From Haliotis rubra (taxonomy: Eukaryota), in NCBI RefSeq assembly GCF_003918875.1, contig NW_025765154.1, positions 124,001 through 188,000 on the forward strand: 64,000 nucleotides of DNA, read 5' to 3'. Shown one piece after another: positions 8,509 through 44,168 of this stretch; the first letter of the stretch is position 1; the number at the start of each line of letters is the position of its first letter. The notes beneath the pieces are model-generated. The model had not been told where the DNA came from. It ran no database searches and was given only the letters and a program-made list of their open reading frames with translations. Made by a program: the position numbers and the translations under genes.

Positions 8509-8748
<240 letters not shown>

Positions 8749-11910: not shown

Positions 11911-12092
11911 CTGTATGTGTTCTTCGATGTGCTTTTAAGTGAGAGCTCTTTGTGTAAACCTTCATGCAGCCTTCAAAGTCACATCGATGGACTCTCCGTT
12001 TTTTCTGACTGTCTGAGTAGGGATCTGTCTTACTAACCATTGTCACCGGGTAGGAACTCTTTGGCCCTCCATTTTCTAAATATTTGAACTGC
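11911..12092 (-). CDS. KLF12: KLF zinc finger 1 exon (QFKYLENGG...[32 protein letters not shown])
   Basis: Acceptor ttctgtttttcag|, donor ACAG|gtgagc. Basic NLS followed by C2H2 ZF1; [23 protein letters not shown] is the KLF3/8/12 type. Confidence 0.95.
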
Positions 12093-12761: not shown

Positions 12762-12852
12762 TCGGATGCTTCTTTTATCCTCCTCAGAGACAGAAGAGCT
12801 GCGGAGCCGATTTTATTGACAGATTCGACAGAGACATTCGGGTGATCTTCAT
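12762..12852 (-). CDS. KLF12: KLF linker exon ((D)EDHPNVSVESVNKIGSAALLSLRRIKEAS(E))
   Basis: Acceptor ttgtcttgcag|, donor GA|gtaagt, 91 nt. Phase 1 in and phase 2 out exactly bridge the PVDLS exon and the ZF1 exon with no stop. Confidence 0.75.
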
Positions 12853-14177
12853 CTGCAAGACAATTTAATCCCAGTTATACAAAAGACTTAGCTTCATCTG
12901 GTGGAAATGCTTTGCAAATATCTTACATCCATCTTGTACCATATTCAACCAAATAAACACTCAACTGTCATGAACACTCTCCATCAAGATCTGGCTAACT
13001 GACCCTCTATACCTAGTACAGACTCGCTTCAAGCTACTAGGCATCTGTTAATCCCATACAAAATTCATTAGTTCAACTGGTTTACAGTTTTTGTTCTGTA
13101 CAATTGGGCTTGGTGATTAAAATATAATTTAGAAAACAATTTAGAAAAATATACTCTTATGCAATCAAACACAAAAACAGAATGAAATGAAGTTAAAGAG
13201 CCAGTTATCCTATATTGGCCTATTCAGGAGCTTCTTTCGTAATTTAATTATAAGGAATAAACAGACTCGGAAAGAAAAAAAATATAAAAAATACAATTTC
13301 AAAAAATATTCGTCTTACCACATTTGTGAAATGACTATGCATCAAATAATGAAAATCTTTATAAATGCATCCGAACGTAAGACCAAGAAAGAATGCCTGA
13401 AACATGTTGAAAGTAAGCTTGACTGAACTTTCCATTCTTATTGTTTGGCCAATTCCTCAAAAGTAGGCACTCCGACTTCTTTCAAATCATTATTAAAATA
13501 TCACACAAGACTTAACAGGTCATGGTTGACAACGCTGTCATGTTTTGACGTCCATACTCGCCACTTACCAGGCAACATGCGCCATAAAGAGGATATTCAA
13601 ACCACTCTGTCATTAAACCTTCTCTATACATCTTCGTATTTCCCTCCTTTGTATGTGATAAATAATTATATACATTCACCAGGGACACACTTCCCTCCCA
13701 TTTGGAATAATATCAGGGGTGTTTTTTTCAATTCTCTATCACAGGCATTTTCAGATGAATTAATGTATATTAGTCAAATGCATATTTAAAGGAATTATTC
13801 CTAACAATAAATACCCTGCATTAGTTCCATTTAGAGCTTTAGCTCCGGTCTCCGATATTTGAAATGCAGGTTAGGAGTTGGGGAATCCTGGTGAACTGTT
13901 TGAACCCATCTGAGCATGAATTGATATCATTTTAAAACATAGAATCAGTTCCACATTTTGTATGCAGCAAAGAGCCATTTATTCAGTCTCATGACTGTAT
14001 TAGTTCAACCACAATGACCCTTTTCATCTGTAGTTACCTACATTCAAGAACAATTTATCTGTAGTTACTTGAATATGTCATTGTTAGATACAGATACATA
14101 AAAACTGTCGAAATGAATAAAGTCATGATTTGCCATGTCTAACTTACATTACTGTACTTGTTGCCAGGTATACTGGC

Positions 14178-15124
14178 ATATATCATCCCAGCCAACACAG
14201 GTAGGTATATGACATATATCATCCCAGCCAACACAGCTAGGTATATGACATATATCATCCCAGCCAACACAGCCAGGTATATGACAGGCCAACACAGCCA
14301 GGTATATGACATATATATTATCCCAGCCAACACAGCCACGTATATCACATATATCATCCCAGCCAACACAGACAGGTATATGACATATATCATCCCTGCC
14401 CACACAGCCAGGTATATGACATATATCATCCCAGCCGACACAGCCAGGTATATGACATATATCATCCTAGCCAACACAGACAGGTATATGACATATATCA
14501 TCCCAGCCAACACAGCCAGGTATATGACATATATCATCCCAGCCAACACAGCCACGTATATCACATATATCATCCCAGCCGACACAGCCAGGTATATGAC
14601 ATATATCATCCCAGCCAACACAGCCAGGTATATGACATATATCATCCCAGCCAACACAGACAGGTATATGACATATATCATCCTAGCCAACACAGCCAGG
14701 TATATGACATATATCATCCTAGCCAACACAGCCAGGTACATGACATATATCATCCCAGCCAACACAGCCACGTATATCACATATATCATCCCAGCCAACA
14801 CAGCCAGGTATATGACATATATCATCCCAGCCAACACAGCCAGGTATATGACATATATCATCCTAGCCAACACAGACAGGTATATGACATATATCATCCC
14901 AGCCAACACAGCCAGGTACATGACATATATCATCCCAGCCAACACAGCCAGGTATATGACATATATCATCCTAGCCGACACAGCCAGGTATATGACATAT
15001 ATCATCCTAGCCGACACAGCCAGGTATATGACATATATCATCCTAGCCGACACAGCCAGGTATAAGACATATATCATCCTAGCCAACACAGCCAGGTATA
15101 TGACATATATCATCCCAGCCAACA
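14178..15124. repeat. 36-bp minisatellite, about 26 copies
   Basis: Unit ATATATCATCCCAGCCAACACAGCCAGGTATATGAC; explains the stop-free 12-aa-periodic ORFs on both strands. Confidence 0.97.
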
Positions 15125-15398
15125 GAGCAACAAGCACTGAGATCTGATTTCAATGAGATTATTTAATATCATCGCCCAGAATGAATAAACAAATACAACA
15201 GTCTAAGTGGTCACTGACAACATGAACAACTATACAATACCAACAATATCATAGGATTTAATACAAGAAATCTGTATCCTTTATGCAAATAGACAAGGAG
15301 CAAAGAAATGAATAAAAACACTGCATATTGAACATCCCTCCAAATGACACTGCTGTTGGAAGTAATTTTAATGACTTCTCAACCCTCTTTGTTGAGAA

Positions 15399-16937: not shown

Positions 16938-17104
16938 GGGTGGTGGGGTAGCCTAATGGTTGAAGCATAAGCTCAGTACACTGAAGACCCGGGTTCGATT
17001 CCCCACATAGGTACAATGTCTGAAGACCATTTCTGGTGTCCCCTGCCGTGATATTGCTGGAATATTGCTAAAAGCAGCGTAAACTAAACTCATTCACTCA
17101 CTCC
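16938..17104 (+). mobile_element. SINE family A (part of the inverted duplicate with 38449-38746)
   Basis: A box TAGCCTAATGG, B box GGTTCGATTCC, (ACTC)n tail. Confidence 0.9.
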
Positions 17105-17782
17105 TTAAATTCACCTCTTGAACTTCTATCTGGACAAAATCAGACAATATTCTGATATTGTCATTTATAATATAAATTCAATAATACCTTTCAAACATTA
17201 ATAATATGCCTATTGGTAATCTTTGAGATGTCAGCACGGTCAGTAGTGACTCTAGTGTGTGAATTTAGTTAAATGCCACTTTAAAACATTATTCCTGATA
17301 AATGACATCGTCTGGTTATCGTTGGAAGAAAGCCGAAAGTGATAGAAGTTTTTGGAACAAGACAATACATTACATAACATGAATAAATCAAACAAAACAA
17401 CACTGTCATAGAACAACAATCTGCCTTTAAGTATCAATGATTGTTTACTAAATGATAACAAACAATCAGGTGCAATATCAGTCAATTCATACCTTACAAA
17501 ATTTCAATTAAGTGAGCAAAACAGTTTTTGTTTGTGTTTCCAAAATCAAATGAAAATAGTCTTGCCAGGAGAACAAACACTTGTTGGATATTGTTTTGAC
17601 TGCCTAAAAAAAAATGTTTTGCTTCAACATGTTGGAAATCTTAGTCCCAATTTTCGTGTAAATATGTCAGGCAATTGCTGTCAACTGGTTTCAACAAGAC
17701 CCTCCAAGGTGAGTCACAAACTAGAACAGCTTGGATCCCGTTCCCAGTTCATGAGTGAGTGACTTGTCCCAATTTGGACCAG

Positions 17783-17888
17783 GGTCCCAATCCACAAAGC
17801 CTCGCAGCACTGCGACATTTGTGCGCTTATGATAAATTACAGAGTTACGACAGTTCGTAACGTTAAAAAGCCTTTGTGGATCGGGACC
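17783..17888. mobile_element. Palindromic Harbinger-like MITE
   Basis: TIRs GGTCCCAATCCACAAAG / CTTTGTGGATCGGGACC, TSD CAG/CAG. Confidence 0.85.
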
Positions 17889-18087
17889 CAGGCTGTTAAA
17901 ACTAGTGGTCGATAACATGAGCAATAAGCAATATCCATGGCAATAAATACACAAAATCATCAGTATCACACATTTCAACCACCTATGGATTGATCACATA
18001 CACCTGACATTATATTTATATTCGATGAGGCAGTATGTATTCAAAGTAGGAAAGCCATTATGATCCACACAAACTCTATTGGATGTA

Positions 18088-19142
18088 CTGAGTAAGTACG
18101 GTTTTATGCCGCTTTTAGCAATATTCCAGCAATATCACGGCGGGGGACACCAGAAATGGGCTTCACACATTGTACCCATGTGGGGAATCCAACCCAGGTC
18201 TTCGGCGTGACGAGCGATTGCTTTAACCACTAGGCTAACACACACACACAGACACCCAACCCCACACACACACACCCCACCCCACACCACACACCCCATA
18301 TTGGCTTTACTGAGTGCCTTCTAAACCAACTGGTAAGTGGTAAGTAATCTGAAAAGGTGCCCCTACTGATGTTTTTGACAGTCCATATTTTCTTGTGTAT
18401 AATGCACATTATTTATAAAAAACAGGTGTTTGGTGTTTGTAGCATGGATACATCACTGCCTAGTAATCGCTATCCTACCGTTTCAATTTCATTGGCATTT
18501 AGATTAAGTATTTTGACAACAATACAATCCTTGAAAAATTCATATTGTCACCTATGGTTTAAGTATGCACTCCATTCATCAATTTTTAACACTCCCTGTG
18601 CACTTATTACAATAATTACAGTAATTAATCTGGTTAATAAACATAACCCGGCATAAGGCATGATGACTGACTGACTGAGTTGGGTTTTACGCTGCTTTTA
18701 GCAATATTCCAGCAATATCACGGCAGAGGACACCAGAAATGGGCTTCACTCATTGTACTCATGTGGGGATTTGAACCCGGGTCTTTGGCATGACGGGCCA
18801 ACACTTTAACCACTAGGCTACTCCAACATCAGCGCTAGGACTGTGGGAATTCTACATTAGGGTATCGGAGTTACGATCACCTTAGAGCTGAGATAGCTTC
18901 ATACAATGACTAAACAGCAATAACTGGGGAAGCCACCCAACTCTTCCTTCACAGCAGTTACCATGCTGTATAAGGGGTACCAAGAAGATAGAAGTGAGTG
19001 AGTGAGTGAGTTTAGTGTTACGCCGCTTTTAGCAATATTCCAGCAATATCACTGCGGGGGAACACCAGAAAGCTTCACACATTGTACCCATGTGGGGAAT
19101 CGAACCGGGTCATAACCTGTCACTAGGCTACCCACCACCCCC
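18088..19142 (-). mobile_element. Cluster of three SINE A copies (~18088-18240, ~18662-18825, ~18993-19142)
   Basis: Each matches the consensus. The first is followed by a CA-rich expansion; the third has TSD CAAGAAGAT(A/G)GAAG. Confidence 0.85.
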
Positions 19143-20089
19143 AAGAAGATGGAAGATAGAAGACATCATTTCAAATTCGAGCAACACAAAAAGGAGGCAG
19201 TACGGTAACACTAAAAGTAAACTGTATCTTATGCTAAACAACATTTATCACCATCTGCTTATCAAGTAGGAAAACACATCACATTAACATTTCAAACTTA
19301 CTCCTAAAATGTTAAAAGGCAATCAATCTGTTAAATGAAAAGACACTACAGATAACAAATACTTCTGGGATGGAACACAGCAATTCGAAACTCAAACCAA
19401 CCATCAAACAGTGTGAAGGTGTGTTTGGTCCCTGTACCAATAGTGATGGGACGTGAGAGAGGAATGTAACCAAGTTCAGGTGTGGCCCTGCAAGGAAGTT
19501 AGCAAGCTTGGGCATAAACAGCAGCCACTCCCACACCCTGCATTACGGTTGTGTTCCACACGGTTTTCTTCTGCCATGTTTCCAATACTAAGTTTCAACA
19601 AAAACTCACACGTGATAGTTTTAAGGAAAACCCAACCTATTCTATCTTCTACGAGAGGAGGTAATTAATGTCTGTATCAGCCTTATAAAGTGTTGCTCCT
19701 GTTTAGAAATAGCTAATCATTTCTTACTTTATACATATTCTCAAAAATCTCTGAAAAAATTATCATTCAAGAAATGAGAAAACACAATGTACCTGTTAAA
19801 TGATCAAGTTTCACAGGATGTTCAGACATTCTCCATTCATTTGTTTTAGAATCGTTAACAATAATGAATAAAGTATAAGTATTAATAATTAATTTAGTCC
19901 CAGAAATAAAGATGCCACATTAAATGCTTTACAATATTTATTTGTTACATTTCATTCCTGATTACCAACTTAATTCTATGCCATATATTTATATCCAGCA
20001 ATCGAACTGTCCAGTTTATAACGAAGAAACACAGGTGCTCACATATACACAATGATTCTGCACAGATACTCTAGTTTATGAACTACATG

Positions 20090-20780
20090 TAGGCATTACA
20101 TGGATACATAAACTTTTTTTACATACAGGTATTTGCTATAAACTCTCTCAACATTACATCTAGTTGCTGTACACATATATATCCACTTTATGAGTGAGTG
20201 AGTTTAGTTATACGCCGCTCTCAGCAATCTATGAAATATAGCTAAGTTATATGGATACACACATAAATGAATTATACCTAGGTGAAATATGGATAGATAC
20301 ACAAATCTTTTTACCTACAGCTAGTTGCTGTACACACATATATATATATTTCAAAACACCTAGTTGTTATACACATATATATCCACTTAATGAATTATAC
20401 GTAGGTGAAATATGGATAGATACATAAATCTTTTTACCTACAGCTGGTTGTTATAAACATATATATCCACTGAACAAATTATACCAAGTGATATATGGAT
20501 GCATACAAATTTCTTTATACCTACAGCTATTTGCTATACACATATTTATCCACTCTTTCAAAATACATTTCTGTACAGATATATATCCACTTCATGACCT
20601 TCAGCGAATTTTTAAACAAATTTATATTTTCACTCATTGAAAACGCAGATATTTCTGTGAGAGAGATAAATCAATTTTATGACACCAATATACAGATATA
20701 AAATCTTTGAAAGTACAGCTAGTTGGTCTACAGATATACATCAACTTAATGACTTAATCCAGATGATCGTCAGATACATA
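20090..20780. repeat. Degenerate tandem repeat
   Basis: Motifs ATGGATA(G)ATACA.AAAT..TTTTACCTACAGCTAGTTG.T.TACACATATATATCCACTT recur about 6 times. Confidence 0.7.
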
Positions 20781-20835
20781 GCATTCTACCATAACTTCAG
20801 TAAATACTGGATTGTGATTGGTTAATTAAAGTCAT

Positions 20836-21110
20836 TCAGAGGTATATAATCATGTTATATACCTCTGATTTTCCAACACAGTATGTATTATATTTAAATC
20901 TTAATAATGTGGTTATGATAGAATGCATTCGGTTTTAAATCAAATTTAGAGCTATTATAATTTTGTTATATACCTCTGATTTTCCAACACAGTATGTAAT
21001 TTTTCTTAAATCTTAATAATGTGTTTATTATAGAACATGTTCGGTTTTCAATCAAATTTAAAGCTTTTATAATTTCTTTATATACCTCCAATTTTTCAAC
21101 AGTATATTTA
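20836..21110. repeat. 111-112 bp tandem triplication starting at a perfect hairpin
   Basis: TTATATACCTC..ATTTTCCAACA at 20855, 20966 and 21078. Hairpin TCAGAGGTATATAA-tcatg-TTATATACCTCTGA at 20836-20868. Confidence 0.8.
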
Positions 21111-21207
21111 TCCCCCATCAAATCCACATATGCACATTGTATAACAGTCATTACATGTACAGACACTTAACATCAACCTTAGCATCACAGACATACAGAT
21201 ATCCCAC

Positions 21208-21316
21208 CTTTTCTTCCAACGCGTAAATCCAAGCCTTGATGCACATGCATATCTGCTACAAACTCTGGTAGTCCTAGTGTTCGCTTGACAGACAGGTCAA
21301 CAGGTTCGGTCTGTGG
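21208..21316 (-). CDS. KLF12: KLF exon with CtBP-binding motif (PQTEPVDLSVKRTLGLPEFVADMHVHQGLDLRVGRK)
   Basis: Acceptor ttgttttattgcag| (phase 0) and donor AAAG|gtggga (phase 1). QTEPVDLS is the hallmark of KLF8/KLF12. An alternative phase-0 donor TCT|gtatgt at 21197 is also present. Confidence 0.85.
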
Positions 21317-22195
21317 CTGCAATAAAACAACTAACGTCAGTTCATGTACCAGTATCACACATACCAACTTCAATCACAGATACAATACTGTGGAAATGAT
21401 CTCAGAAATCGTCATCACGCTCAAACAATACCATGTACACTCACATGAGCCCACCATGCAAGAGCACAACCCCCCAGAGAGGATTATATTTACACGATAT
21501 ATGGTAGAAGGACGTTGTGATTGTGATAGTCACACGGGATAATGTCAACTCACATCGGCCATGTACGGAGTCTGGCAGCAAGCACACCGAGGTATCACCA
21601 TGTTGGAGTCAGCCGCACATACATGAAATATTGTATTGAGTAGGTGACTCCACAAGGAGTTAGTCATTTGACAGGAAAGTGACGACAGCACAAGTGGAGC
21701 GTGATACACTTCACGGGTCGTTGGCCAGCGAGCCGCCTGCAGACTTTCAGCTCCTGGTGTGCTGTGAATATGTGCTTTTTCACGTTGAGGTTTCTTAAAT
21801 CTACACTATCAAATTCTGTGTCGGGTCTCTTGGTTACCTATTCCTGCGATGCAAATCCTCTTCCAAGGAAATTTTTAATACTATTTTTGTGTTTTTAAAT
21901 ATTCTTTTGACATGTACACACCTAGGGAAACATAAGAATTTCTATCCAATTTATCAGTAATGTGTGAGTGATATTTTATTCCATAATCACCACATACTAC
22001 AGAATTCTACCAAAGTTGCCAGAAAACTCATGATAAAGCTATTAAGTAAAACTAACACTCCCTCAAATTTCTAGCAGACATCATTAATGTCTCCTCAATT
22101 AATTAACAAATAAGCACAAACAAAATTCATAAACATGTAATAAAAATAATCTCTGTAGTTTAACCATTTTGAAAAAAAAATTCACCAAAACCTAC

Positions 22196-22258
22196 TTTAG
22201 TCTGTTGTTCCCAGTATAACCAGGCAAAATCGTCGGCAGTTGCACTAGACATGTGCAT
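22196..22258 (-). CDS. Candidate alternative first coding exon of the KLF gene (MHMSSATADDFAWLYWEQQTK), short 205-aa isoform
   Basis: ATG at 22258, 21 open codons, donor AAA|gtaggt in phase 0, matching the PVDLS-exon acceptor. Promoter-like motifs lie immediately upstream. Confidence 0.55.
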
Positions 22259-22289
22259 CCTTACACTTCCCTCTCGCCCTGTGAATAGG

Positions 22290-22520
22290 CGGTGGAAAGC
22301 TAGCCACACCTTATACATACAGTACAACAGTGCAAGCGTGGATGGTATCCAAATTTACAAGGGGAGAGGCTTGGCTGCTATTAAGTGAAAACCTCGGCAA
22401 ACTTCCACACACTTTTCAGAGAGCCCAACCAATCAAGCAGTCCGAAAATGGGTATCGTTGCAAAGACAAATTTCAAGCGTCTAATCAGAGGACGGGTGGT
22501 GTTGTCCTAGTCTTCATGTC
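22290..22520 (-). promoter_or_regulatory. Candidate internal promoter for the short KLF isoform
   Basis: GCCACACC (KLF/CACCC-like) next to TATAAG on the minus strand near 22303-22318; CCAATCA near 22429; GGGTGG near 22494; locally raised GC. Confidence 0.4.
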
Positions 22521-22814
22521 AACAGAGCGCGCCCCAGTTGAAGGAAGTGAGCGTACAGGATGCTTGACTGGATGAAACTGTAAAAAGTTCCCCAGGATGT
22601 TATCGTCTATGACCGTTAAACAACAGACAGGGAATTGGTGAAGGTGTCAAATTGTTGTCAAACGCTTATCAAACATCAGAGAGGGCTGGTTTGACTTCTG
22701 GGGACCTGTTGGTCCAATCATGCATGACTAGGAGATGAGGCCGGGGTAACATAGCCGATCTTTGTAAATATTGAAACAGTTTTCGATGCTGGTTGTGTAT
22801 TACATGCTGATGAA

Positions 22815-23911
22815 TGAGTGAGTGATTGAGTATGGTTTTACGCCGCTTTTAGCAATATTCCAGTAATATCACAGCGGGGGACACCAGAAATGGGCTTCAC
22901 ACATTGTACCCATGTGGGGAATACAGCCCAGGTCTTCGGCGTGACGAGCAAACGCTTTAACCACTAGACTACCCCACCGCCCCTGGTGATGAATGAGTGA
23001 GTGAGAATGGTTTAATGTGAAACTCAGCATTATTCAAGTTACAGTGGGGTTACTAAGAAAGATCCTCATACATCGTGGTCATGCAGGAGCTGAACCTGGT
23101 TCTTGAGATTGTACCACTATGCTATCCCTCCAACCCATATTTTCAACTGAACATATATGAGTGGTCACCACTGAATACTATCACTGCTTGGAAAGTGAGG
23201 AAAAGGATGTACAAATATTTCACTCAGGTGCTGAAAACGATATATTTTCATTACAAATTAAACTACTAGCTATTTTATTTAGATTAATATTTAGTTTCAG
23301 AAACAGTGTTACCTTATGTAAAATATATCTCAAGAAATCAAAATCAAATCAAAATGGAGCCCAAGACAATGCTAATTACAGGTTTGTGTTGGAGTGAGAC
23401 TGGGCATTACAGGGTTGTGACTAAAATTATATATGGTCCTTTTGATAACTGTTGCTTTAAAATGTGAGCAAATGAGTTTAGGTTTACACCGCTTTTAGCA
23501 CTATTTCATCAATATCACGGCGAGGGCACCAGAAATGGGCTTCATACTTGTACCCATGTTGGGAATCGAACTCAGGTCTTCGGCGTGACAAGCCAAATGC
23601 CTTAACCACTAGGCTACCCCACAGTGCCTAGCCAATCAAAATCTAATACGATAATCATGTAGTCTTCACAACAAACATAAAAGATGCATTAATACAATTA
23701 ATTAATTATTGAAATATATATAAATTCATTAATAGATTATCTTTTCATTTAAATAAGTAAGAGGGGCAGTGGGGTAGCCTAGTGGTTAAAGCGTTGGCTC
23801 GCACGCCGAAGACCCGGGTTCGAATCCCCACATGGGTACAATGTGTGAAGCCCATTTCTGGTGTTGCTGGAATATTGCTAAAAAGCGGTAAAACCAAACT
23901 CAGTCAGTCAG
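22815..23911. mobile_element. Three SINE A copies (22815-22983 minus, ~23462-23620 minus, 23763-23911 plus)
   Basis: Consensus matches; the third has TSD TAAATAAGTAAG and intact A/B boxes. Confidence 0.85.
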
Positions 23912-28588: not shown

Positions 28589-29149
28589 CTTTCCGTCTTT
28601 ATTTCTCTTCACTGGGCGATTAGTAACGGGGACGTGGACACGTTCAATTTCTTCATCCATTTCATCATCATCATCTTCTTCCTCCTCATCATCATCAATC
28701 GGCTCCTGTTTAATCACTACATCATCAGCACCATTTGAATTTGAGCAGTTAAAAGCCACCTCATAGTCCCCATTCACCGCTTCCGTCTTGATGCGTTTCT
28801 TCAACGCAAACATCTGGCCCACAGTTCCACTACTGGAGTGATTCGGACTGCGGTTTGCAAACGCAGATTTGATCTGACTCAGCTTTATAAGGTTGTACCT
28901 TGCGTCATTTTGATGAGATGGTCGATGTAAACTTTTGTTCAAGTTTACTGTGTTAATACTGGAATCGGCCTCAATGGGCGTAGGGGCATACACTCCCTCA
29001 GGAATACTGTCTATGGGGTAGGCAGGGTCCTCCAACCCTGGCGATAAGGACTGAGGGGTGCTGGTGCCACTGGAGCCATCCATGTCGCAGTGAATGTCTG
29101 GGCGTTTGTCAGGATGGGTGTGGGCACTGGGATTGCGGTCTTCCGTCAT
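28589..29149 (-). CDS. KLF12: KLF3/8/12-group Krüppel-like factor, first coding exon of long isoform (MTEDRNPSAH...KRIKTE...VIKQEPIDDDEEEE...NKDGK)
   Basis: Acceptor ttttttgtcgttttcag| at 29165, ATG at 29149, 187 open codons, donor AAG|gtttgc at 28588 (phase 0). Contains IKTE and IKQE SUMO consensus motifs and a D/E tract. In frame with the PVDLS exon. The symbol means KLF12-like; the gene is probably co-orthologous to KLF3/8/12. Confidence 0.8.
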
Positions 29150-30999
29150 TGTGTCAAGGGAATGCTGAAAACGACAAAAAAACAATTGCACTTTTTTTTA
29201 AAAAAGAGTCAGACGGACAGGAAGATGATGATACTCTCTAGCGTGGATCAAACTAATGTTTTTTAATATGGATTCCTGCGACATGACAACTTGACTGCGG
29301 TAGCTGCTTTCAGTACATGTAATGGGAATAAAATCATTTATTAAATAAAACTACATCTATTATTGTACATAGTTAAATTTCAGCAGTATTCCAGGCATAT
29401 CAACGCAAGGTGGACACCAGGTATGGATTTACCACATTGTAACCACATGTGAAACAAACCCAGGCTTTTGTTGTGCCAAGCCAACACTTTAACCATTGGG
29501 CTACCTCACCAACACACATCAAGCAAAAACAAAACTGATTAGAGAGTGAGCCTTGTTTTACGTCAGTGTCAGTATAATTTTCAAATTTTCAGTTAAAAAA
29601 ATGTTTGCATCACAATCCAAACTTTTTTAGAACAAATAAAAAAAAAAATACTGTTACTGTTGAATGGAAATGTATGAATCACTGGATTATCTGGTCAAGA
29701 CTGTATTATTAACTGACTGATGACAAATAGCTGGAATATTGTTGACTGCCAACCACAAATAAATCCAGTTATTATCCCATCCAGTAGAAGCCTACAAGGG
29801 AAGACAAATTTGAACTGGAATAATAAACTGAGTTTAGTTTTACGCTGCTTAAAGCAATATTCCAGAAATATCACGGCGGGGGACACCAGAAATGGGTTCT
29901 AACATTGTACCCATGTGGAAACGAATCCTGATCTTCAGCTAACAAGCGAACACTTTAACCACTAGGCTACCCCGGGGCCCATGAAACAGGAATAATACTG
30001 ACTACATACTACTTGTGTAGGAGAGTTCTGGGGGTAGGGACAAGGTGTAGAGGTTACAGAGGTCAGAGCCTGCTGTAAGTAGATTGTTACTTCTTACATC
30101 AGGGTGGGGTGGGTGTTTCTAAACAGCTAATTTATGTATTTATGAGTGGTCAAGTACAAGAACGCTTATCAATGCCATATACATCCATAATAAATAATGA
30201 CAACTTACCCTGAAACAATCTCTCAGTTATTGTAACAGGCATGTCAACAATACAACAAAATATTTACATTGATATGTGCGCTATATAAATATCCCATCCT
30301 ATAATAATAATAATATGTTTAACAGGGTACTTGCACACAGTACACTGGCTACTTGACTGTAAAACTGTGGTTTGTCATCATTTTCAGTATTTTTTAGTTT
30401 TACGTATGGACTAATATTGCTAAGTGTACAAGACCAAACTTTTTTAATAGGCTCAAGCTGTACACTCGTGTCTTCAGTAACAAGCCACTTTGTACACACG
30501 ATGCATTAAGGCATGAACAACTGGAAATATATCATTAGCTGTACAAGAAATATCAAAGTATTCAAGCACACAAAAGAATATGTCCAGTTTAATGTCATAC
30601 TTAGTTCATTTTTTATACTCTGGCATTCTGTAAACACAATTATGTACAACAACATGAAAGTTTTATAATAAACTGATTGTAATATTCAAACTACCACACA
30701 AAACATAACCTCATAGCAAGTTATATGTGTAGTATTACCGCGACCTCAACATTTTAACATCTTTTGATTCAACATCTGCCACCAATAGATATTTAAAAAG
30801 TCAATAACAACAATTTTAATTTTATTAATTTTAAGACTATTAAAAACTATAGGTAACTGCTTATCAAATAATTAAAATATTTTTGAAACATGTTTTCTTG
30901 TTCCAAGGAACATTTTGAGTGCATCGTATTAAAGTGTGAGATCAAAAATAGATCCTTCAATTAATAACATCTGTCTTATAATTCATGAAAATAAATGGC

Positions 31000-31860: not shown

Positions 31861-32669
31861 GTGTTGTATTTGGTGCAGTCTACGCCTATACCTCGTTATA
31901 ACGCTACAAGGGGATGTTTACCTCAAATGCTTATGTCAGTGCGTTAACTGAGGCTATTAATTTTGGTTGTGCTTACAACGAGGTAATAACGGGTTTTCCT
32001 GCCTTGCCCTCAATAGCCCGGAATTATTATTTGACTTTGAACCTATTTTATACGGTTAATGAGATAACGATTCATAACTTGACTAAAAGTATAAAAAGTG
32101 TACAATATTCAAATTATACATAAATAAGACAATATATGAATATCCCAATTTAATTATCACAATATTAAAATTACAATTGTTCATAAAATGACACTTCAGG
32201 AAGGAATATTTGTGGCTGAGACTGACATGAAGCAATTATAGGAACATAGAAGATGGGATAATTGATTTATCTCACTAAAGGCAAGGCTATAATTCATAGA
32301 CACACATAATGATCATACCCTATCAGAGTTATCTCGCTGATAAAACACCAGGGAATACTGCAAACTCTGACAGCTTGGAGAGGGTTTGGGGTAGGAGTGG
32401 ATGTGAAGGGGTGAAGGGGTGGAGATCAATCCTCCAACAGGAATGACCTGAGGGTTAAAGGAACTAATTGTGAGGGTGGTGGTATAACAGTTTATAATCC
32501 CATGTAGGAAGTACTTCGGGGTGGGGGTGGAGTGGAGTATGAAAGTCAATTTAGATTTACATTTAGTAAAACATTGGTAAACTGTTTTCGGAGGGGGCAT
32601 ATCCAACACTGATTCCCCCAAACTGGGACATGGAGAACGTCAGTCAGATTGTGGGGTAGTCTTTGAGTA

Positions 32670-33000
32670 GGGGTGGGGTGAAGACAATGGTTGGTGGGGT
32701 GAAGACAATGTTTGGTGGGGGTGAAGGGGTGAAGACAATGGTTGGTGGGGGTGAAGACAATGGTTGGTGGGGGTGGGGTGAAGACAATGGTTGGTGGGGT
32801 GAAGACAATGTTTGGTGGGGGTGAAGGGGTGAAGACAATGTTTTGTGGGGGTGAAGACAATGGTTGGTGGGGGTGGGGTGAAGACAATGGTTGGTGGAGG
32901 TGGGGAGGTGAAGACAATGGTTGGTGGGGGGAAGTGGTGGGGAGGTGAAGACAATGGCTGTTGGGGGAGTGGGTGGGGAGGTGAAGACAATGGTTGGTAG
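32670..33000. repeat. G-rich minisatellite, 12 copies of G(G/A)GGTGAAGACAATG with G-run spacers
   Basis: Counted directly; embedded in a G-skewed tract ~32380-33230. Confidence 0.9.
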
Positions 33001-33852
33001 GGCAGGAGGAAGGGAGGTGAAGAGGGTAGAGAGTAGGGATGATGGCAGGTGAGGAAGGTGGAGTGATGGTTGTTTGTGGGTGGAGTACAGGTAGTTGATG
33101 AGGCAGGAGGCAATCATAGGGGAGATACATCAGGGTGGGGGTGCTAGTAGGTCAGGGTAGAGGTGTCTGAAGACATTTAACCCTGGGCAATGTGAACCCT
33201 GACAGGTTGAGGAAGGGGTGGGGATGGGGATGTTAATTAGAACATGACCCCCAGGCACAGACTGTCAACTCTATTGAACTATATTGTGGGAGGGGATGAC
33301 CTATAAATAACTTTATGACCATAAAGCACTTAGTCCCCGAATCACCCTACTCATGGTTTGTAGGGAAACTCTCCCTAGACCCTCTCAGGGTAGTGTGTTA
33401 CTAATAACATCAAGCATTGATTGGCTTGTCCAAGTTTGATTATTTATAGGCTGATGTGATGCATAGCTGTACTGCTGTTGGCAGTTTCATTCAACACTAT
33501 TCACCTGCTATCTTAACCTACCTATATTACATATTGTGTATGTATCCTATATCTGTTCCTATAGAACCATTAGCGTTATCCTTCTTGAACTCTGACAATC
33601 TTACCATCAACAACAGCATTTACACTGACATTCAGTCCCAGAAATAAAGTTATCTTCCTTTAAAATATATATCGACATATATTCAGTAATTCACATGGAG
33701 CCCAGAACATTCCTTAATTCCCAGAGCTGAAGCAATCTGGACTAATGCAAAATCATTATCTAGAATCTAGTGGGACTCTTTTTTTAAATTCATGCTTTAG
33801 GGTATGAAGACTACAAGAGCTTTTATATTGAATACATCAACTGTAGCATGGC

Positions 33853-34205
33853 AGAGTGAGTGAGTGAGTGAGTTTAGTTTACGCTGCTTTTAGCAACATT
33901 TAAGCAATATCACACATGTGGGGAATCAAACCTAGGTCTTTATGCAATGAGCAAACGCTTTAACCACAAGGCTACCCCACTGCCCACTAGCAGTAACCCA
34001 TGCTTGTCGTAAGAGGTGACTAATGTGATCAGGTGGTCAGACTCGCTGACTTTGTTCACACATGTCATCGTATCAATTGGTAGATCGATGCTCATGACAC
34101 TGATCACTGGATTGTCTGGTCCAGACTTGATAACTTACAGACCACCGCCATACAGCTGGAATATTGCTGAGTGCTGCGTAAAACTAAACTCACTCACTCA
34201 CTCAA
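33853..34205. mobile_element. Head-to-head SINE A (minus) and truncated family B (plus)
   Basis: Consensus matches with outward-facing (ACTC)n tails. Confidence 0.8.
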
Positions 34206-35614
34206 GTTCCCATCAACCAAAAAAGCAAGTTTGACCGTCCGCTTCTGCTCATCGACTCTGTGGTCATGCTTGTAAAATCCCAGTCTACTTTTATCATCTG
34301 TGTTCATTGATATAACAAAGTTCTTAAATTAAATGCCAAGACAAATAACTTATACACCGGACAATTACAGCTGTCACCTTCTCCTCATCAAATATATTCC
34401 TATGACCATTGCATGTTGTTAACAACAATTCATCAGAATCTACATTTTTTTTAATCAAAAGAAATTTTCTTTTTGCAATCCTAATTAAAACAACAATGAT
34501 TCTTAATATAGCTCTACAGTAAACAATAGGATGGTTTCTGACATTGTTAAGGAATCAATGCAGACTTCAATATGAAACAGGCCAACACATTGGGCATTGT
34601 GAGCTTGCTGTGAAAACAAAATACTTCCTAGCAAACATCCAGAAGGGGCACTGCCTGACTAGCATGGCACAGACAGTGTCATTTTAAATTCATGCAATTT
34701 CTTACACAGCAGGGTAAGGGAGTCTGTAGAATGTGACCAGTGAAATTGAAAAGTTGAAACACTGATTTATAGACCCTGAAACAAAAAATCCAAACAACCA
34801 AAAGAACAGAAATAGTCTAAATTTCCCAACATGTCTTGGTCTGTTAATTTTCAGAAAAGCAAGAATGTCTGTGGGCACTATTCCGCAAGAGTCAAAATAT
34901 GTTAATAAAAACAAATTGTGGAGACCTCCAGTAAATGTTTATGCAAAATGAGCTTCTAAAGGGTTTATAGGGTGAGAGTTAGGGTTTGGATGTTCACGAC
35001 GGGAGGTGCACCCAGGACAAGTCAATGATAAAACACATCAATGAAAAGCCTCACTGCATTCACGATTTGTTTAGTACAACACTTTCAGAGTATTAAAACT
35101 GTTATTTTTGGAAAATCATGTGTTGGCTGCCAGGACTGATACTCCTACAAATGTTTTAAAGTCAGTGGTGATATAATATCATTTACATAACGTCGCAGCT
35201 GCCAGTGCCTTGTGAAGACGAGATTTATAAACATCGTCTGAATTAGGTTTGATTTTTTTTATGTGAAAAACACTAAACCACAAATCATTCAGTCTGAGCC
35301 CGAGTACACTGCTACTTATCTTCAACCAAAGAGCTGAGGCTTCTGAAGACGAAAAAAGAAAGAATCGTGTTCCATTCTCAGTCAGTTGTTTCATTAAAAG
35401 CCATGAAGAAAAATTGCGACACATTAAGGGGCCAAACTCCCTGCACAACTTGCATCCGTTCAGCCATTTCGGAGAAGAGACGTTCAGCGGCAACAAAATG
35501 CAAAAACATTATCAAATAAGCTAACCTTGATTACAATTCATTATCCTCTAGTGAATCACATAAATAGACCTTGGAAGAAGGCAAGAAGCTGATCGAGAAT
35601 TGAGTCTGTGATAA

Positions 35615-35845
35615 CAGACTATCTGTGAGTGGCTACAGACTATCCCTAACAGACTAAAGACTTATAATCTAAGACTACAGACTATCCCTGACAGACTAAA
35701 GACTTATAATCTATGACTATAGACTGTCCCTGACAGACAACAGACTCTATCCATGACAAGGGACTCTATCCATGACAAGGGACTCTATCCATGACAAGGG
35801 ACTCTATCCATGACAATGGACTCTATCCATGACAAGGGACTATCC
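35615..35845. repeat. Compound minisatellite (ACAGACTATC-based 41-bp unit; 19-bp GACTCTATCCATGACAAGG x5)
   Basis: Direct repeats visible in the sequence. Confidence 0.85.
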
Positions 35846-36107
35846 AAAACAAACAGACTTGACTTCGATCAGTAGAATACAACCACAGTAGGCATAATGT
35901 CTTAAACGTCATGATTCCCAACACTTTAGTAAATTATCATCTTTGTTTATCATATTTCTTAGTTGAGTAAATCATTGTGGCTATGGAAATAAACAACATT
36001 AGTTCTCTCATTTAAGACATACCTAGCATGCGGAGACAACTGTTGACTGATATCTGTAATTACATTTTCCCAGGTAACAAACATTTTCAATATATCACTC
36101 ATATTTG

Positions 36108-36560
36108 TGGGCAGTCTGGTAGCCTAGTGGTAAAAGCGTTTGCTTGTCACGCCAAAGACCCAGAGTTGATTCCACACAAGGGTACAATGTGTGAAACGTA
36201 TTTCTGGTGTCCCCTGCTGTGATATTGCTAAAAGTGGCATAAAACTAAACTAAACTCACTCACTCATTCATATTTGTAATTTGTAGATTTGAATGTGTGT
36301 CTGAACTTCAATGCACATTCAGCATTATTCCAACAACATGACAGAAGCCTGTACATTTTGTTTGTTTGCTGTTTAACACTCAGCACTATTTCAGTCTGTA
36401 AATAATCCAGTTTGGACCAGACAATCCAGTGATCAATGTCATGAGCATCGATCCACACAATTGGGATACGATGACATGTGTCAACCAACCCAGCAAGCCT
36501 TACCACCTGTACGTGTAAGTCACCTCTTACGACGAACATGGGATGCTGAAGACCGATACA
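36108..36560. mobile_element. SINE A (plus, ~36108-36268) and family B (minus, ~36358-36560)
   Basis: Consensus matches. Confidence 0.8.
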
Positions 36561-38610: not shown

Positions 38611-39838
38611 TGATGTAGCCAAATGGCTGCAGTAAACGTTACCCAAAAGAAATCAATCAGAATCAAGATAAGATTTTTTCAATTCAATCACACAATATGA
38701 ATCAAAGCATAATTCAATACTATAGATCATATAACTCACAAATCTGTTAACCGCTTTGTATACATCATCAATTGACAATGGCTACAGTAAAAACAGAAAA
38801 TTATTTATGTCGATAGGTGCGTCACAGGAATCAATAGACAAACTGTCTAATACACATCCGTGTAGCATGAATGAAACATCCTCACTGAACAGCTTTACAT
38901 TGTGGGACGCAGCAGCCCAGTAACAATGGGGCTCCATGTTGTACTAGGAAGGATATTCACACCCACGCCACTTCTACAAAAGGACACTTCCAGCATCATG
39001 ACATTGTCATTTGACAGTAATTGTACCTGATATTATTACAAACCCAAACTGGTTATGATTGACTATTAACATCATGAATTCTGAATCATTAGCATCATTA
39101 TTATGACATCATTATATTGAAATATTCAAACTGAATTCAATTTGGATTGACAATATACCACACTTTATAGCTCATAATGTGCACTTACGAAGAATATACT
39201 TAACATTCTCAGATACATGTTTCATGAAAACTACTATTAAATGTATTGTGCGCAGTCAGATACTACATCAAAATTGCTACAGGTTAACAAACTGGAAATA
39301 ATGAGTGAGTCAATAACGACATGACATTTACATACCATTACTGGAAATGATGATCTACAATTTTAAATTCTTCATCAGATGAGATAATAACAGAAATATC
39401 AAACTGACTTGACAATCCATTGATTTATATCACGAGTAATGCACACTATCACTGTATGATCACATGACAACGTGTGACTGAGAATTACAAACCAATCCAA
39501 TAATCCTTTAATTATAAGGCTACCCAAACACCCTAGACACCTCTTAAAAGAAGTAACTACCTCTGTCTGGCTGTCTTTGTGTACGTTCATACTCCATTAG
39601 AACTTACCACTGCTTCCCTAACAACACATAATATGATAATGCTTAACCAAGGCAATTAATTGTTCACCAATCTTCTTATTTGAAAGTGAGTGAGAATGGT
39701 TCTACGCCGCTTTCGGTAATATTCCAGCGACACCATCATATGATTACACGATCACGTGTCACTACGATTTACCAACCGATGACGACCAGCAGATTTTGCA
39801 AGGAACCAGTTCTAACCCGGACCTACCACTTTATCAAG

Positions 39839-41507: not shown

Positions 41508-41660
41508 NNNNNNNNNNNNNNNNNNNNNNNNNNNNNNNNNNNNNNNNNNNNNNNNNNNNNNNNNNNNNNNNNNNNNNNNNNNNNNNNNNNNNNNNNNNNN
41601 NNNNNNNNNNNNNNNNNNNNNNNNNNNNNNNNNNNNNNNNNNNNNNNNNNNNNNNNNNNN
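41508..41660. other. Assembly gap (153 N)
   Basis: Run of N. Confidence 1.
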
Positions 41661-42179
41661 TAGCAATGTTCCAACAATATCAAGGCAGGGAGCAGAATCT
41701 GATCATAGGCAAGCCAAGGAAACATATCACTTGCAAGGCTACCCCCAAACATTCATAACTTGCTCTGTCAAAGGAGTACACTTTTTATACAGAAATGTCA
41801 ATTTTGACCACTCCAGCATTAAGGATTACCTTTCTGGAGCCACAAAATGTATTTTTTAATTATGATTGTAAGAAATGCTCGTCATTTAACATAAAAGATT
41901 TGTGCCAAGAAATCCATTTTTTCCAAAGTCTTCCTCCCCATCCAGAAAATAGACTAGCTTATCTCCATCGGCTGCCAGCATTATGTGAAGCATGCACTGT
42001 CTCACATGTCGTACTGCCTCACACATCTTACACCCTCACACGTCGTATGTTGATCCTATTTGCATGCTTGTGTGAAGGAAAATAGTTTTCTTTAGCAGAA
42101 CAAAACCTGCTTGTAGTACTGGTTGTACACATTGTGCATGTTCTTTACATATCACTACACTCCATTCCCTGCGGTGCGT

Positions 42180-43310
42180 TGTGAGTGAGTGAGTGAGTGA
42201 GTGTCAGCGAGCAATATATGGGCATTGTGAGTGAGTGAGTGAGCAATATATGGGCAATGTGAGTGAGTGAGTGAGTGAGTGATCAATATATGGGCATTGT
42301 GAGTGAGCAATGAGTGCATTGTGAGTGAGAGTGATCAATATATGGGCATTGTGAGGAGTGAGTGAGCAATATATGGGCATTGTGAGTGAGCAATATATGG
42401 GCAATATATGGTAATATGTGAGTGAGTGAGTGAGTGAGCAATATATGGGCATTGTGAGTGAGTGAGTGAGTGAGCAATATATGGGCAATGTGAGTGAGTG
42501 AGTGAGTGAGCAATATATGGGCAATGTGAGTGAGTGAGTGAGTGATCAATATATGGGCATTGTGAGTGAGTGAGTGAGCAATATATGGGCATTGTGAGTG
42601 AGCGCAATATATGGTAATTTCGAGTGAGTGGGTGAGTGAGTGAGCAATATATGGGCATTGTGAGTGAGTGAGAGCAATATATGGGCATTGTGAGTGAGTG
42701 AGTGAGTGAGCAATATATGGGCATTGTGAGTGAGTGAGTGAGTGATCAATATATGGGCATATATGGGCATTGAGGAGGAGTGAGCAATATATGGGCATTG
42801 TGTGTGAGTGAGAGGAGCAATATATGGTAATTTGAGTGAGTGAGCAATATATGGGGTGAGTGTGAGTGAGCAATATATGGGCATTGTGAGGTGAGTGAGA
42901 GCAATATATGGGCATTGTGTGTGAGTGAGTGAGTGATCAATATATGGGCAATGTGAGTGAGTGAGTGATCAATATATGGGCATTGTGTGTGAGTGAGCAA
43001 TATATATGGGCATGAGTGAGTGAGTGAGTGAGTGATTGAGCAATATATGGGAATTGTGAGGAGTGAGTGAGCAATAATATATGGGGTGAGGAGTGAGTGA
43101 GTGAGCAATATATGGCAATATATGGGCATTGTGAGTGAGTGAGTGAGAGCAATATATGGGCATTGTGAGTGAGTGAGTGAGTGAGTGAGCAATATATGGG
43201 AATTGTGAATGAGTGAGTGAGTGAGTGAGTGAGTGGGTGATTGAGCAATATATGGGAATTGTGAGTGAGTGAGTGAGTGAGTGAGTGAGAGCGAGCAATA
43301 TATGGGCAAG
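42180..43310. repeat. Compound minisatellite (GAGT)n-GAGCAATATATGGGCATTGT
   Basis: Fixed ~20-bp core alternating with variable-length GAGT runs. Confidence 0.95.
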
Positions 43311-43909: not shown

Positions 43910-44168
43910 GGCTCTGTTTCAAAAAGCAATTGTAGCGCTACGACTGTCGTAAGTCTATGTTACAGTTTAAGAGTTATGACAGTCGTAGCACTACGACTGT
44001 CGTAAGTCTATGTTACAGTTTAAGAGTTATGACAGTCGTAGCACTACGTAAGTCTATGTTACAGTTTAAGAGTTATGACAGTCGTAGCACTACGACTGTC
44101 GTAAGTCTATGTTACAGTATAGGAGTTACGACAGTCGTAGCGCCCTGACAGCTTTGTAAAACGGGGCC
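43910..44168. mobile_element. Harbinger-like MITE with internal 53-bp tandem amplification (about 4 units)
   Basis: TIRs GGCTCTGTTTCAAAAAGC / GCTTTGTAAAACGGGGCC, flanks CTG/TTG; unit TAGC.CTACGACTGTCGTAAGTCTATGTTACAGTTTAAGAGTTATGACAGTCG. Confidence 0.85.

What the first reader, a model, noticed from the sequence alone, without database searches (positions are those of the whole stretch)
22196..22520. Hidden alternative first exon: possible N-terminal switch in a KLF repressor
Seen: an exon absent from the ORF track encodes MHMSSATADDFAWLYWEQQTK and splices in frame to PQTEPVDLS, with CACC, TATA-like and CCAAT motifs upstream. It would replace the 187-aa N-terminus carrying both SUMO motifs and the acidic tract. 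DDFAWLYW is an acidic-aromatic pattern typical of activation motifs. YWEQQT..QTEP is reminiscent, from memory, of the KLF6/7 activation segment (YWQQT...LQ(S/T)EP). Inference: two promoters give isoforms with different regulatory output.
Basis: partly seen in the sequence, partly recalled or inferred. Interest (0 to 1): 0.7.

Follow-up and report, generated by a model that had tools for sequence, protein, structure and literature searches.

The report
Conserved alternative first exon, abalone KLF
An unannotated 21-codon exon inside an intron of an abalone KLF12-like repressor gene is conserved, with its start codon, reading frame and splice site, in distant snails, so it is very probably a real alternative first exon that makes a short protein form; its use in abalone RNA was not seen directly.

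Summary
On the minus strand, ATG 22258 to 22196 encodes MHMSSATADDFAWLYWEQQTK, followed by GTAGGT, in phase 0 with the PVDLS exon (21316-21208). The predicted protein has 205 aa instead of 371+. On its own this is not above chance: five places in the 7.3-kb intron fit similar criteria. Conservation singles it out. The ORF and donor are intact in four Haliotis species. The same exon, in the same intron, with ATG, frame and GT donor kept, is found in Gigantopelta (MHMSNVPSAEFGWLCWEHQPTH) and Patella (MLMTEENSQDFHWLYWEHHTN), each with tblastn E about 5e-5, an in-frame indel and excess third-position change. Pomacea and Mytilus RNA contigs show an alternative first exon in this intron spliced to the PVDLS exon. 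Bivalve versions start MHL. Octopus RefSeq has an alternative-N-terminus isoform. Direct proof in Haliotis is missing. Contigs of four RNA runs show only low-depth collinear cover, no listed 22196-to-21316 joint, and one contig reads 8 nt past the donor. The exon sits in a 480-nt block conserved at nucleotide level (promoter or enhancer). The activation-motif and KLF6/7 ideas were not tested. Verdict: a real, ancient, unannotated alternative first coding exon (about 0.7). It is a new member of a known kind, of moderate interest.

The parts
22196..22258 (-). Coding part of the alternative first exon: 21 codons, MHMSSATADDFAWLYWEQQTK, with the start codon in an AGGATG context
   Evidence: Intact in H. 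asinina, H. rufescens and H. cracherodii. Homologous ORFs in Gigantopelta and Patella. Codon comparison.
22190..22195 (-). Splice donor GTAGGT, phase 0
   Evidence: Identical in four Haliotis species. GTAAGG in Gigantopelta and GTAATT in Patella at the aligned place.
22259..22687 (-). Conserved non-coding block upstream of the ATG (candidate promoter/5'UTR/enhancer). It holds the TATA-like box 22319-22309 with the overlapping GGTGTGG box, an ATTGG/CCAAT box, CCACCC, and the 25-nt block 22489-22465.
   Evidence: 93-100% identity to H. asinina, H. rufescens and H. cracherodii, against 55-85% in the flanks. Collinear conserved blocks in Gigantopelta, including the TATA-like box. Motif coordinates.
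21208..21316 (-). Shared PVDLS (CtBP-motif) exon, 109 nt, the acceptor for both the canonical and the alternative upstream exon
   Evidence: Lies exactly at 21208-21318 inside long spliced RNA contigs of X6 and X8.
28589..29149 (-). Canonical N-terminal coding exon (MTED..NKDGK, 187 aa; SUMO-consensus IKTE and IKQE, acidic tract) that the alternative exon would replace
   Evidence: 100% identical to Haliotis rubra XP_046556926.1.
12762..12852 (-). Shared exon 3 (DEDHPNVSVESVNKIGSAALLSLRRIKEAS-)
11911..12092 (-). Shared exon 4 (linker and zinc finger 1)
8509..8681 (-). Shared last coding exon (zinc fingers 2-3 and the stop codon)
21554..21766 (-). Second Haliotis-conserved block in the same intron, with an open frame (ATG 21667) ending at a GTGAGT donor after 21554, also in phase 0. 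It may be an alternative distal donor of the same transcription unit.
   Evidence: Two contigs of run X1 fork exactly at 21554, one of them with a 30-nt unaligned end.

Best explanation
The window carries the Haliotis (rubra-type) KLF12-like gene, a KLF with a PVDLS CtBP-binding motif and three C-terminal zinc fingers, on the minus strand. The 7.3-kb intron lies between the large N-terminal exon (MTED..., 187 aa) and the PVDLS exon. Inside it sits an internal promoter region with a short alternative first exon. Transcription from this region gives an mRNA whose first ATG (22258, context AGGATG) opens a 21-codon exon. That exon splices through GTAGGT, in phase 0, to the PVDLS exon (21316). The product is a 205-aa protein that keeps the CtBP motif, the conserved middle motif and the DNA-binding fingers. 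It swaps the 187-aa N-terminus (two SUMO-consensus lysines, an acidic tract and the conserved LIKLSQIKSAF/MFALKKRIK segment) for an aromatic-acidic peptide with the conserved core (D/E)FxWL(Y/C)WE. Shown here: the exon anatomy; its deep conservation as a coding unit; and the use of an alternative first exon in this intron in Pomacea and Mytilus RNA. Inferred: that Haliotis itself transcribes and splices it; where its TSS lies; and any difference in regulatory output. The short form most probably still binds CACCC/GT boxes and CtBP, but it escapes whatever control the long N-terminus provides.
For: Gene model and the clean 205-aa ORF. Within Haliotis, the ORF and donor are intact in four species, although synonymous change in the neighbouring PVDLS exon reaches 10 of 36 codons. 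Gigantopelta aegis has MHMSNVPSAEFGWLCWEHQPTH|GTAAGG at L002 57023-57088, on the gene's strand, between the MTED exon (50698-51315) and the PVDLS exon (61466); tblastn E = 4.7e-5 in 82 kb. Patella vulgata has MLMTEENSQDFHWLYWEHHTN|GTAATT at L006 39294-39356, between 36686 and 45700; E = 5.2e-5; there the coding part is the only part of the block still detectable by blastn. Codon evidence: synonymous codon differences at identical residues (1-3 per pairwise comparison; H, S and L between Haliotis and Gigantopelta), a 3-nt in-frame indel, and 10 third-position changes against 4-7 at first and 5-6 at second positions. RNA evidence in relatives: the Pomacea Logan contig L001 joins an exon at L007 43325-43479 (ending ATG|GTGAGG) to the PVDLS exon at 44070 by a GT-AG splice. 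Mytilus contigs L011 and L012 start at L010 50400 (L012 begins with adapter sequence), run through MHLTYAEE...CPYVW|GTGAGT at 50537-50626 and splice to 53707. A Mactra genomic exon MHLMYGED...|GTAAGT lies in the same intron. Long and short forms share identical downstream sequence in bivalve clusters. Octopus RefSeq isoform X2 has an alternative N-terminus joined at PVQTEPVDLS. Promoter-like blocks, including the TATA-like box about 50-60 nt before the ATG, are conserved between Haliotis and Gigantopelta.
Against: There is no direct Haliotis evidence. In Logan contigs of four RNA runs the region 22188-22664 is covered only by short, low-depth (2-8) contigs collinear with the genome. No 22196-to-21316 joint is among the listed joints; only 15 of 698 joints are listed, ranked by support, so a low-depth joint could be hidden. 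The X1 contig runs 8 nt past the donor into the intron. The long mRNA contigs holding the PVDLS exon continue upstream off the laid stretch, consistent with the canonical exon. Those contigs also cover sequence upstream of the TATA-like box, so either the TSS is further upstream (a long 5'UTR with three upstream ATGs) or the cover is pre-mRNA. No protein with this N-terminus exists in the 5.8-billion-protein collection. RefSeq isoforms of H. rubra, H. rufescens, H. cracherodii, H. asinina, Gigantopelta and Patella all use the MTED exon. The only hit to the exon is an unspliced ORF (P0097). Within Haliotis the ORF shows 2 synonymous against 2-3 non-synonymous changes, and the block is constrained at nucleotide level over 480 nt, so much of the short-range conservation is non-coding. 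No homolog was found in the chiton Liolophura.
Confidence: 0.7

Rival explanations
1. The 480-nt block is an intronic enhancer or other conserved non-coding element of a developmental transcription-factor gene. On this reading the small ORF and the GT after it are incidental and never spliced.
For: Conservation is highest in the non-coding part (100% over 22507-22448) and extends 430 nt upstream of the ATG. The invariant half of the ORF shows no synonymous change within Haliotis, whereas the real coding exon next door shows 10. RNA contigs are collinear and of intron-like depth, and in X5 the block is not deeper than the intron. Five ORF-plus-donor candidates occur by chance in this intron.
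Against: ATG, open frame, GT donor and phase 0 are kept in Gigantopelta and Patella, with an in-frame indel and a third-position excess. In Patella only the ORF part remains detectable. Alternative first exons at the same gene position are used in Pomacea and Mytilus RNA.
Confidence: 0.12
2. The region is transcribed in Haliotis, but as a long 5' exon that ignores the 22196 donor and uses the distal GTGAGT donor after 21554, or stays unspliced. The MHMSS ORF would then act only as an upstream ORF (it stops 11 codons into the intron), and the protein would start elsewhere.
For: In run X1, cover is continuous from 22664 to 21320. The contig over the exon runs past the 22196 donor. Two contigs fork exactly at 21554, and one has a 30-nt (k-1) unaligned end, as expected at a splice joint in a de Bruijn assembly. 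The donor GATGTGAGTTG and an open frame in phase 0 are kept in four Haliotis species.
Against: The 30 unaligned letters could not be read, so the joint is a guess. The frame upstream of 21554 changes nearly neutrally (5 synonymous against 8 non-synonymous) and has no counterpart in other molluscs. This reading does not explain why the 21-codon ORF with its own donor is conserved in Gigantopelta and Patella. Both donors could be in use.
Confidence: 0.12
3. The exon is an ancestral alternative exon, still used in other molluscs, that is no longer used in Haliotis: a relic not yet decayed.
For: It is absent from all Haliotis RefSeq isoforms and from the protein collection.
Against: The ORF, ATG and donor are intact in four Haliotis species, while neighbouring intron sequence has diverged to 55-85% identity. 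A relic would have decayed like the flanks.
Confidence: 0.05

Closest known systems
Vertebrate KLF3/KLF8/KLF12 (CtBP-recruiting Krueppel-like repressors)
   Same: Three C-terminal C2H2 fingers and a PVDLS motif (PXDLS is the CtBP-binding consensus: PMC3820594, PMC4558859). RefSeq names the Haliotis product KLF12.
   Different: Orthology to the vertebrate clade was not tested here. Presnell et al. 2015 (PMC4558859) placed the PVDLS-KLF class in vertebrates, with a convergent hexapod case. The long mollusc N-terminus (MTED..., LIKLSQIKSAF...MFALKKRIK) matches no Pfam family.
Short isoforms of the same gene in other molluscs: Mytilus and heterodont-bivalve transcript contigs (MHL... N-termini), the Pomacea Logan contig, and Octopus bimaculoides 'KLF12 isoform X2' (XP_014778670.1)
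   Same: In each, an alternative first exon is joined in phase 0 to the PVDLS exon in place of the MTED N-terminus; genomic mapping places that exon in the same intron for Mytilus, Mactra and Pomacea, but the octopus exon was not mapped. Gastropod and bivalve versions share the MH(M/L) start and an acidic-aromatic make-up.
   Different: The peptides differ in length and sequence (1 codon in Pomacea, 30-37 in bivalves, 65 in octopus). Homology of the gastropod exon to the bivalve and octopus exons is plausible but not proven. The Haliotis, Gigantopelta and Patella exon is unannotated.
Alternative promoters/first exons of vertebrate KLF genes (for example Klf3 1a/1b, from my own knowledge; not checked in a paper here)
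   Same: Several starts for one KLF gene, with CACCC-type boxes near a start.
   Different: As I recall, the Klf3 first exons are non-coding and do not change the protein. Here the first exon changes the N-terminus.
KLF6/KLF7 N-terminal segment
   Same: Only a remembered likeness of YW(E)QQT followed by Q(S/T)EP.
   Different: The QTEP part belongs to the PVDLS exon, which both isoforms share.

Membership tests
KLF3/8/12-type (CtBP-binding) KLF | Three C-terminal C2H2 zinc fingers of KLF type | tested here: met
   C2H2 finger patterns at 11983-11915, 8664-8596 and 8574-8512. Pfam zf-C2H2 and zf-H2C2_2 match the identical RefSeq protein P0051.
KLF3/8/12-type (CtBP-binding) KLF | PXDLS/PVDLS CtBP-binding motif N-terminal to the fingers | tested here: met
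   PQTEPVDLS is encoded at 21316 onward and is conserved in all mollusc orthologs retrieved.
KLF3/8/12-type (CtBP-binding) KLF | Phylogenetic placement with vertebrate KLF3/8/12 | not tested
   Only automatic RefSeq names (KLF12, KLF8, KLF3, luna, KLF4...) are available. PMC4558859 argues that the class is vertebrate-specific.
KLF3/8/12-type (CtBP-binding) KLF | Physical binding of CtBP and repression | not testable with these tools
   Needs a pull-down and a reporter assay.
Alternative first exon with its own promoter | Splice junction from the exon to the shared downstream exon in RNA | tested here: inconclusive
   Haliotis: no such joint is listed in contigs of four runs, and one contig reads through the donor. 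Pomacea and Mytilus: the junction is present in RNA contigs.
Alternative first exon with its own promoter | Transcription start just upstream, not spliced from further upstream exons | tested here: inconclusive
   Haliotis: contigs cannot show starts; cover reaches 22664 and stops. Mytilus: contig L012 begins with adapter letters at L010 50400, collinear with the exon. Pomacea: the 5' part is collinear apart from a 12-nt indel.
Protein-coding exon | Start codon, open frame, donor and phase conserved across distant species, with a coding-type substitution pattern | tested here: met
   Haliotis x4, Gigantopelta and Patella. Tblastn E about 5e-5 in each of two independent loci.
Acidic-aromatic transactivation motif (9aaTAD-like) | Activates transcription when tethered; binds coactivator | not tested
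   Only composition is known: the core (D/E)FxWL(Y/C)WE is conserved. No predictor or assay was run.
KLF6/7 N-terminal segment | Alignable similarity to KLF6/7 N-termini | not tested
   No KLF6/7 sequence was retrieved. The text search found nothing.

The most novel reading that the evidence does not exclude
The short isoform is an ancient product of the gene, shared at least by gastropods and bivalves. Its conserved aromatic-acidic N-terminus, placed directly before the CtBP motif, would be a cofactor-docking or activation module that changes the sign or strength of regulation. The internal promoter, with conserved CACCC-type boxes, would put the switch under KLF/SP auto- or cross-regulation. 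A corollary is that PVDLS-type KLFs with this two-isoform design predate vertebrates, contrary to the 2015 inference.
Probability: 0.15. Interest if true: 0.6.

Novelty: new member of a known kind. Interest (0 to 1): 0.42.

Why it matters
The finding adds an unannotated, deeply conserved protein isoform to a CtBP-type KLF repressor in abalone, limpet and a vent snail. It links that isoform to short isoforms seen in bivalve and apple-snail RNA. It also gives a concrete, testable case of N-terminal switching by promoter choice in a lophotrochozoan transcription factor. It shows that automatic annotation misses short first exons even when they are conserved. As a side result, molluscs clearly possess PVDLS-type KLFs, which bears on when the KLF3/8/12 architecture arose.

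Tried and rejected
- Rfam gave no family in or around the block, at gathering threshold over the whole window and at E up to 1 over 21900-22900. A known structured RNA gene is therefore not indicated.
- The exhaustive protein search with the MTED exon returned only representatives with 36-52% identity over the matched stretches. This was due to 50% clustering, not to absence of Haliotis proteins.
- P0085, a 217-aa Logan member of the Haliotis cluster that looked like a possible short isoform, is an intron-retained canonical exon.
- Searches for a protein carrying the Haliotis alternative N-terminus found none.
- The ESM Atlas feature search with the Mytilus short N-terminus gave no usable hit.
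- The chiton locus has no detectable homolog of the exon.
- The Pomacea weak hit DDWAWAVW at L007 41225 has no ATG or open-frame context and was dropped.
- Paper searches for abalone KLF work and for the literal KLF6 motif gave nothing useful.
- Earlier scan notes near this place concern a SINE family and the terminal exon and did not bear on this question.
- The N run at 41508-41660 was left alone.

Full report
**What is there.**
- On the minus strand the window carries a KLF gene. All five shared coding exons translate 100% identically to Haliotis rubra 'Krueppel-like factor 12 isoform X1' (XP_046556926.1, P0051).
- I verified the model by assembling the exons:
  - N-terminal exon 29149-28589 (MTED...NKDGK, 187 aa)
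  - PVDLS exon 21316-21208
  - exon 12852-12762
  - exon 12092-11911 (zinc finger 1)
  - last exon 8681-8509 (zinc fingers 2-3 and the stop codon)
- Together these give 371 aa, equal to P0051 from its MTED onward.
- RefSeq isoforms X1 and X2 add different short extensions from first exons further upstream. A piece of X1 maps at 61611-61567.

**The observation.**
- Between the MTED exon and the PVDLS exon, ATG 22258 to 22196 reads MHMSSATADDFAWLYWEQQTK. It is followed by GTAGGT and is in phase 0 with the acceptor at 21316.
- The spliced alternative CDS is a clean 205-aa ORF.
- The replaced N-terminus carries IKTE, IKQE and an acidic run. The short form has none of these.
- As a single-genome pattern this is weak. 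Five donor positions in the 7,272-nt intron show an ATG-started open stretch of at least 10 codons ending at a phase-0 GTRRG.

**RNA in Haliotis.**
- The stretch 22190-22560 is held at 0.72-0.86 of its sampled words by five runs of 'organism A' guessed to be RNA. It is held at 0.17 by runs of four further organisms.
- I laid contigs of four runs (X1 and X5, organism A; X6, organism B; X8, organism D) on 17000-22950.
- The runs are RNA. The PVDLS exon lies exactly at 21208-21318 inside 1,383- and 2,249-nt contigs, whose 723-787 upstream letters fall off the stretch. That fits the canonical exon plus 5'UTR; the two extra matching letters AG fit the end of the MTED exon.
- The candidate exon region is covered only by short, low-depth contigs collinear with the genome:

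| Run | Contig position | Depth |
|---|---|---|
| X1 | 22188-22664 | 8.0 |
| X5 | 22234-22641 | 2.6 |
| X6 | 22234-22498 | 2.0 |
| X8 | 22214-22589 | 3.7 |

- For comparison, the mRNA contigs have depth 118.7, 18.2, 7.1 and 113.1 in the same order.
- No 22196-to-21316 joint is among the 15 joints listed, but 683 more are not shown. The X1 contig runs 8 nt beyond the donor.
- Direct evidence for use of the exon in Haliotis is therefore absent. Contigs drop rare forms, so this is not evidence of absence.
- One unexplained detail: in X1 two contigs meet exactly at 21554. One of them has a 30-letter (k-1) unaligned end there. A strong GTGAGT donor follows 21554, also in phase 0. This suggests a distal donor may be used.

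**Conservation within Haliotis.**
- I fetched the orthologous loci of H. asinina, H. rufescens and H. cracherodii.
- The block 22687-22208 is 93-100% identical in all three. Flanking intron is 55-85% identical, and the PVDLS exon is 85-97%.
- The ORF is open, 21 codons long and followed by the same GTAGGTTTTG in all four species. Changes are S5N, D9A and D10H plus two synonymous changes, and FAWLYWEQQTK is invariant.
- The PVDLS exon shows 10 synonymous and 0 non-synonymous codon changes between the window and H. rufescens. The block therefore evolves far more slowly than neutral sites, and at nucleotide level, not only at protein level.
- This argues that the block also has a non-coding role, as a promoter, enhancer or 5'UTR.

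**Deep conservation as a coding exon.**
- In the Gigantopelta aegis locus, tblastn with the 21-aa peptide gives one hit at E 4.7e-5. It lies on the gene's strand at 57023-57079, between the MTED exon (50698-51315) and the PVDLS exon (61466).
- The sequence there reads ATG...MHMSNVPSAEFGWLCWEHQPTH, followed by GTAAGG, in phase 0.
- In Patella vulgata the hit (E 5.2e-5) lies at 39294-39353, between exons at 36686 and 45700. It reads MLMTEENSQDFHWLYWEHHTN|GTAATT, again 21 codons and phase 0.
- Codon by codon:
  - identical residues carry synonymous differences (H, S and L between Haliotis and Gigantopelta);
  - Gigantopelta has one extra in-frame codon;
  - third positions differ about twice as often as first or second positions (10 against 4-7 and 5-6);
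  - the start context AGGATG is shared.
- In Patella, blastn detects only the coding part of the block.
- In Gigantopelta, several upstream blocks, including the TATA-like TGTATGTA(T/A)AAGGTGTGG about 50-60 nt before the ATG, are collinear with Haliotis.
- A chance ORF in an enhancer would not keep its ATG, frame, donor and phase in three gastropod orders.

**The same architecture in other molluscs, with RNA.**
- *Pomacea.* A 205-aa Logan protein (P0042) begins M-VIQTEPVDLS. Its 1,649-nt RNA contig joins an exon at L007 43325-43479, ending ATG|GTGAGG, to the PVDLS exon at 44070 (acceptor ...aacag). This exon lies in the intron after the canonical exon (35339-36139).
- *Bivalve short proteins.* These were assigned to bivalves by best match to Mytilus and Mactra proteins. 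They begin MHLTYAEELYLHH...CPYVW or MHLMYGED..., followed by P(V/L)QTEPVDLS. They share identical downstream sequence with long MTED-type forms from the same or closely related species.
- *Bivalve genomes.* In the Mytilus coruscus and Mactra antiquata genomes these exons lie in the same intron, with GTGAGT and GTAAGT donors.
- *Mytilus RNA.* Two RNA contigs run collinearly from L010 50400 through the exon and splice to the PVDLS exon. One of them starts with adapter letters, which points to a true 5' end.
- *Octopus.* Octopus bimaculoides RefSeq lists a 'KLF12 isoform X2' with an alternative N-terminus joined at PVQTEPVDLS.
- *Chiton.* No counterpart was found in Liolophura.
- No protein with the Haliotis, Gigantopelta or Patella alternative N-terminus is in the 5.8-billion-protein collection. 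All their RefSeq isoforms use the MTED exon. The only hit to the Haliotis exon is an unspliced ORF. For these snails the exon is therefore unannotated.

**Most likely mechanism.**
- An internal promoter in a strongly conserved block drives a short first exon. This exon splices to the PVDLS exon and yields a 205-aa KLF.
- That protein keeps the CtBP motif and the DNA-binding domain. It exchanges the SUMO-consensus and acidic N-terminus for a 21-aa aromatic-acidic peptide with the conserved core (D/E)FxWL(Y/C)WE.
- The anatomy and the conservation are shown. Expression in Haliotis, the TSS, and any functional difference are inferred.
- The short form would still be expected to bind CACCC/GT boxes and CtBP.
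The KLF6/7 likeness was recalled from memory and could not be tested either. The QTEP half of that likeness belongs to the shared exon.

**Comparison and novelty.**
- The gene meets the two architectural criteria of the KLF3/8/12 class: a PVDLS motif (PXDLS being the CtBP-binding consensus) and three KLF fingers (PMC3820594, PMC4558859). Orthology to the vertebrate clade was not tested.
- Presnell et al. 2015 (PMC4558859) reported the PVDLS-KLF class only in vertebrates and, convergently, in some hexapods, although Lottia was in their set. The mollusc genes seen here (gastropods, bivalves, octopus, chiton) show the architecture is wider.
- Alternative first exons are ordinary for KLF genes, and short isoforms of this very gene exist in bivalve, apple-snail and octopus data.
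- What is new is the unannotated gastropod exon, its conserved peptide, and its embedding in a nucleotide-level conserved block. I rate it a new member of a known kind, of moderate interest.

Noticed in passing
window 21554-21766 (minus strand): A second block is conserved among four Haliotis species (90-98% identity). An open frame (ATG 21667, 38 codons, open back to about 21780) ends at a conserved GTGAGT donor in phase 0 with the PVDLS exon. In run X1 two contigs fork exactly at 21554, one with a 30-letter unaligned end, as at a splice joint. The frame changes nearly neutrally (5 synonymous, 8 non-synonymous) and has no match in other molluscs.
   Followed up: partly
window 8509-61611 and loci L002, L006, L007, L009, L010, L013: Molluscs (gastropods, bivalves, octopus, chiton) have a KLF with a PVDLS motif and a conserved middle motif (DHPNV..VNKIGSAALLSLRRIKEASEQF). 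Presnell et al. 2015 (PMC4558859) reported the PVDLS-KLF class only in vertebrates and some hexapods, although Lottia was in their data set.
   Followed up: partly
window 22811-22990, 18100-18237, 18690-18830, 18990-19110 and others: tRNA-related SINE copies are present (Rfam tRNA hits at 18756-18827 and 23558-23617). They show summed contig depths of 10^4-10^5 in all four RNA runs and account for nearly all listed 'joints', so they swamp the read tables for this region.
   Followed up: no
window 14139-15147: A long tandem array gives open frames on both strands, with a repeated ...AGMIYVIYLAVL... unit of about 11 residues on the minus strand. It looks like an intronic minisatellite.
   Followed up: no
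window 32001-34000 and 42001-44000: Two 2-kb bins have a strong positive GC skew (0.31 and 0.36) against a background near zero. They lie in the large upstream intron of the gene.
   Followed up: no
L001 1-30 versus L007 43300-43334 (Pomacea): The RNA contig carries 12 extra letters relative to the reference genome just inside the alternative first exon. This is probably an indel polymorphism, not a splice.
   Followed up: partly
window 29150-29170 and 61567-61611: The MTED exon has an acceptor about 17 nt before its ATG. RefSeq X1 (MADSVERTS...) and X2 (MLFHSLDT...) reach it from two different upstream first exons, so the gene already has at least two annotated starts. The MAD... first exon is also present in Gigantopelta and Patella isoform X1.
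   Followed up: partly
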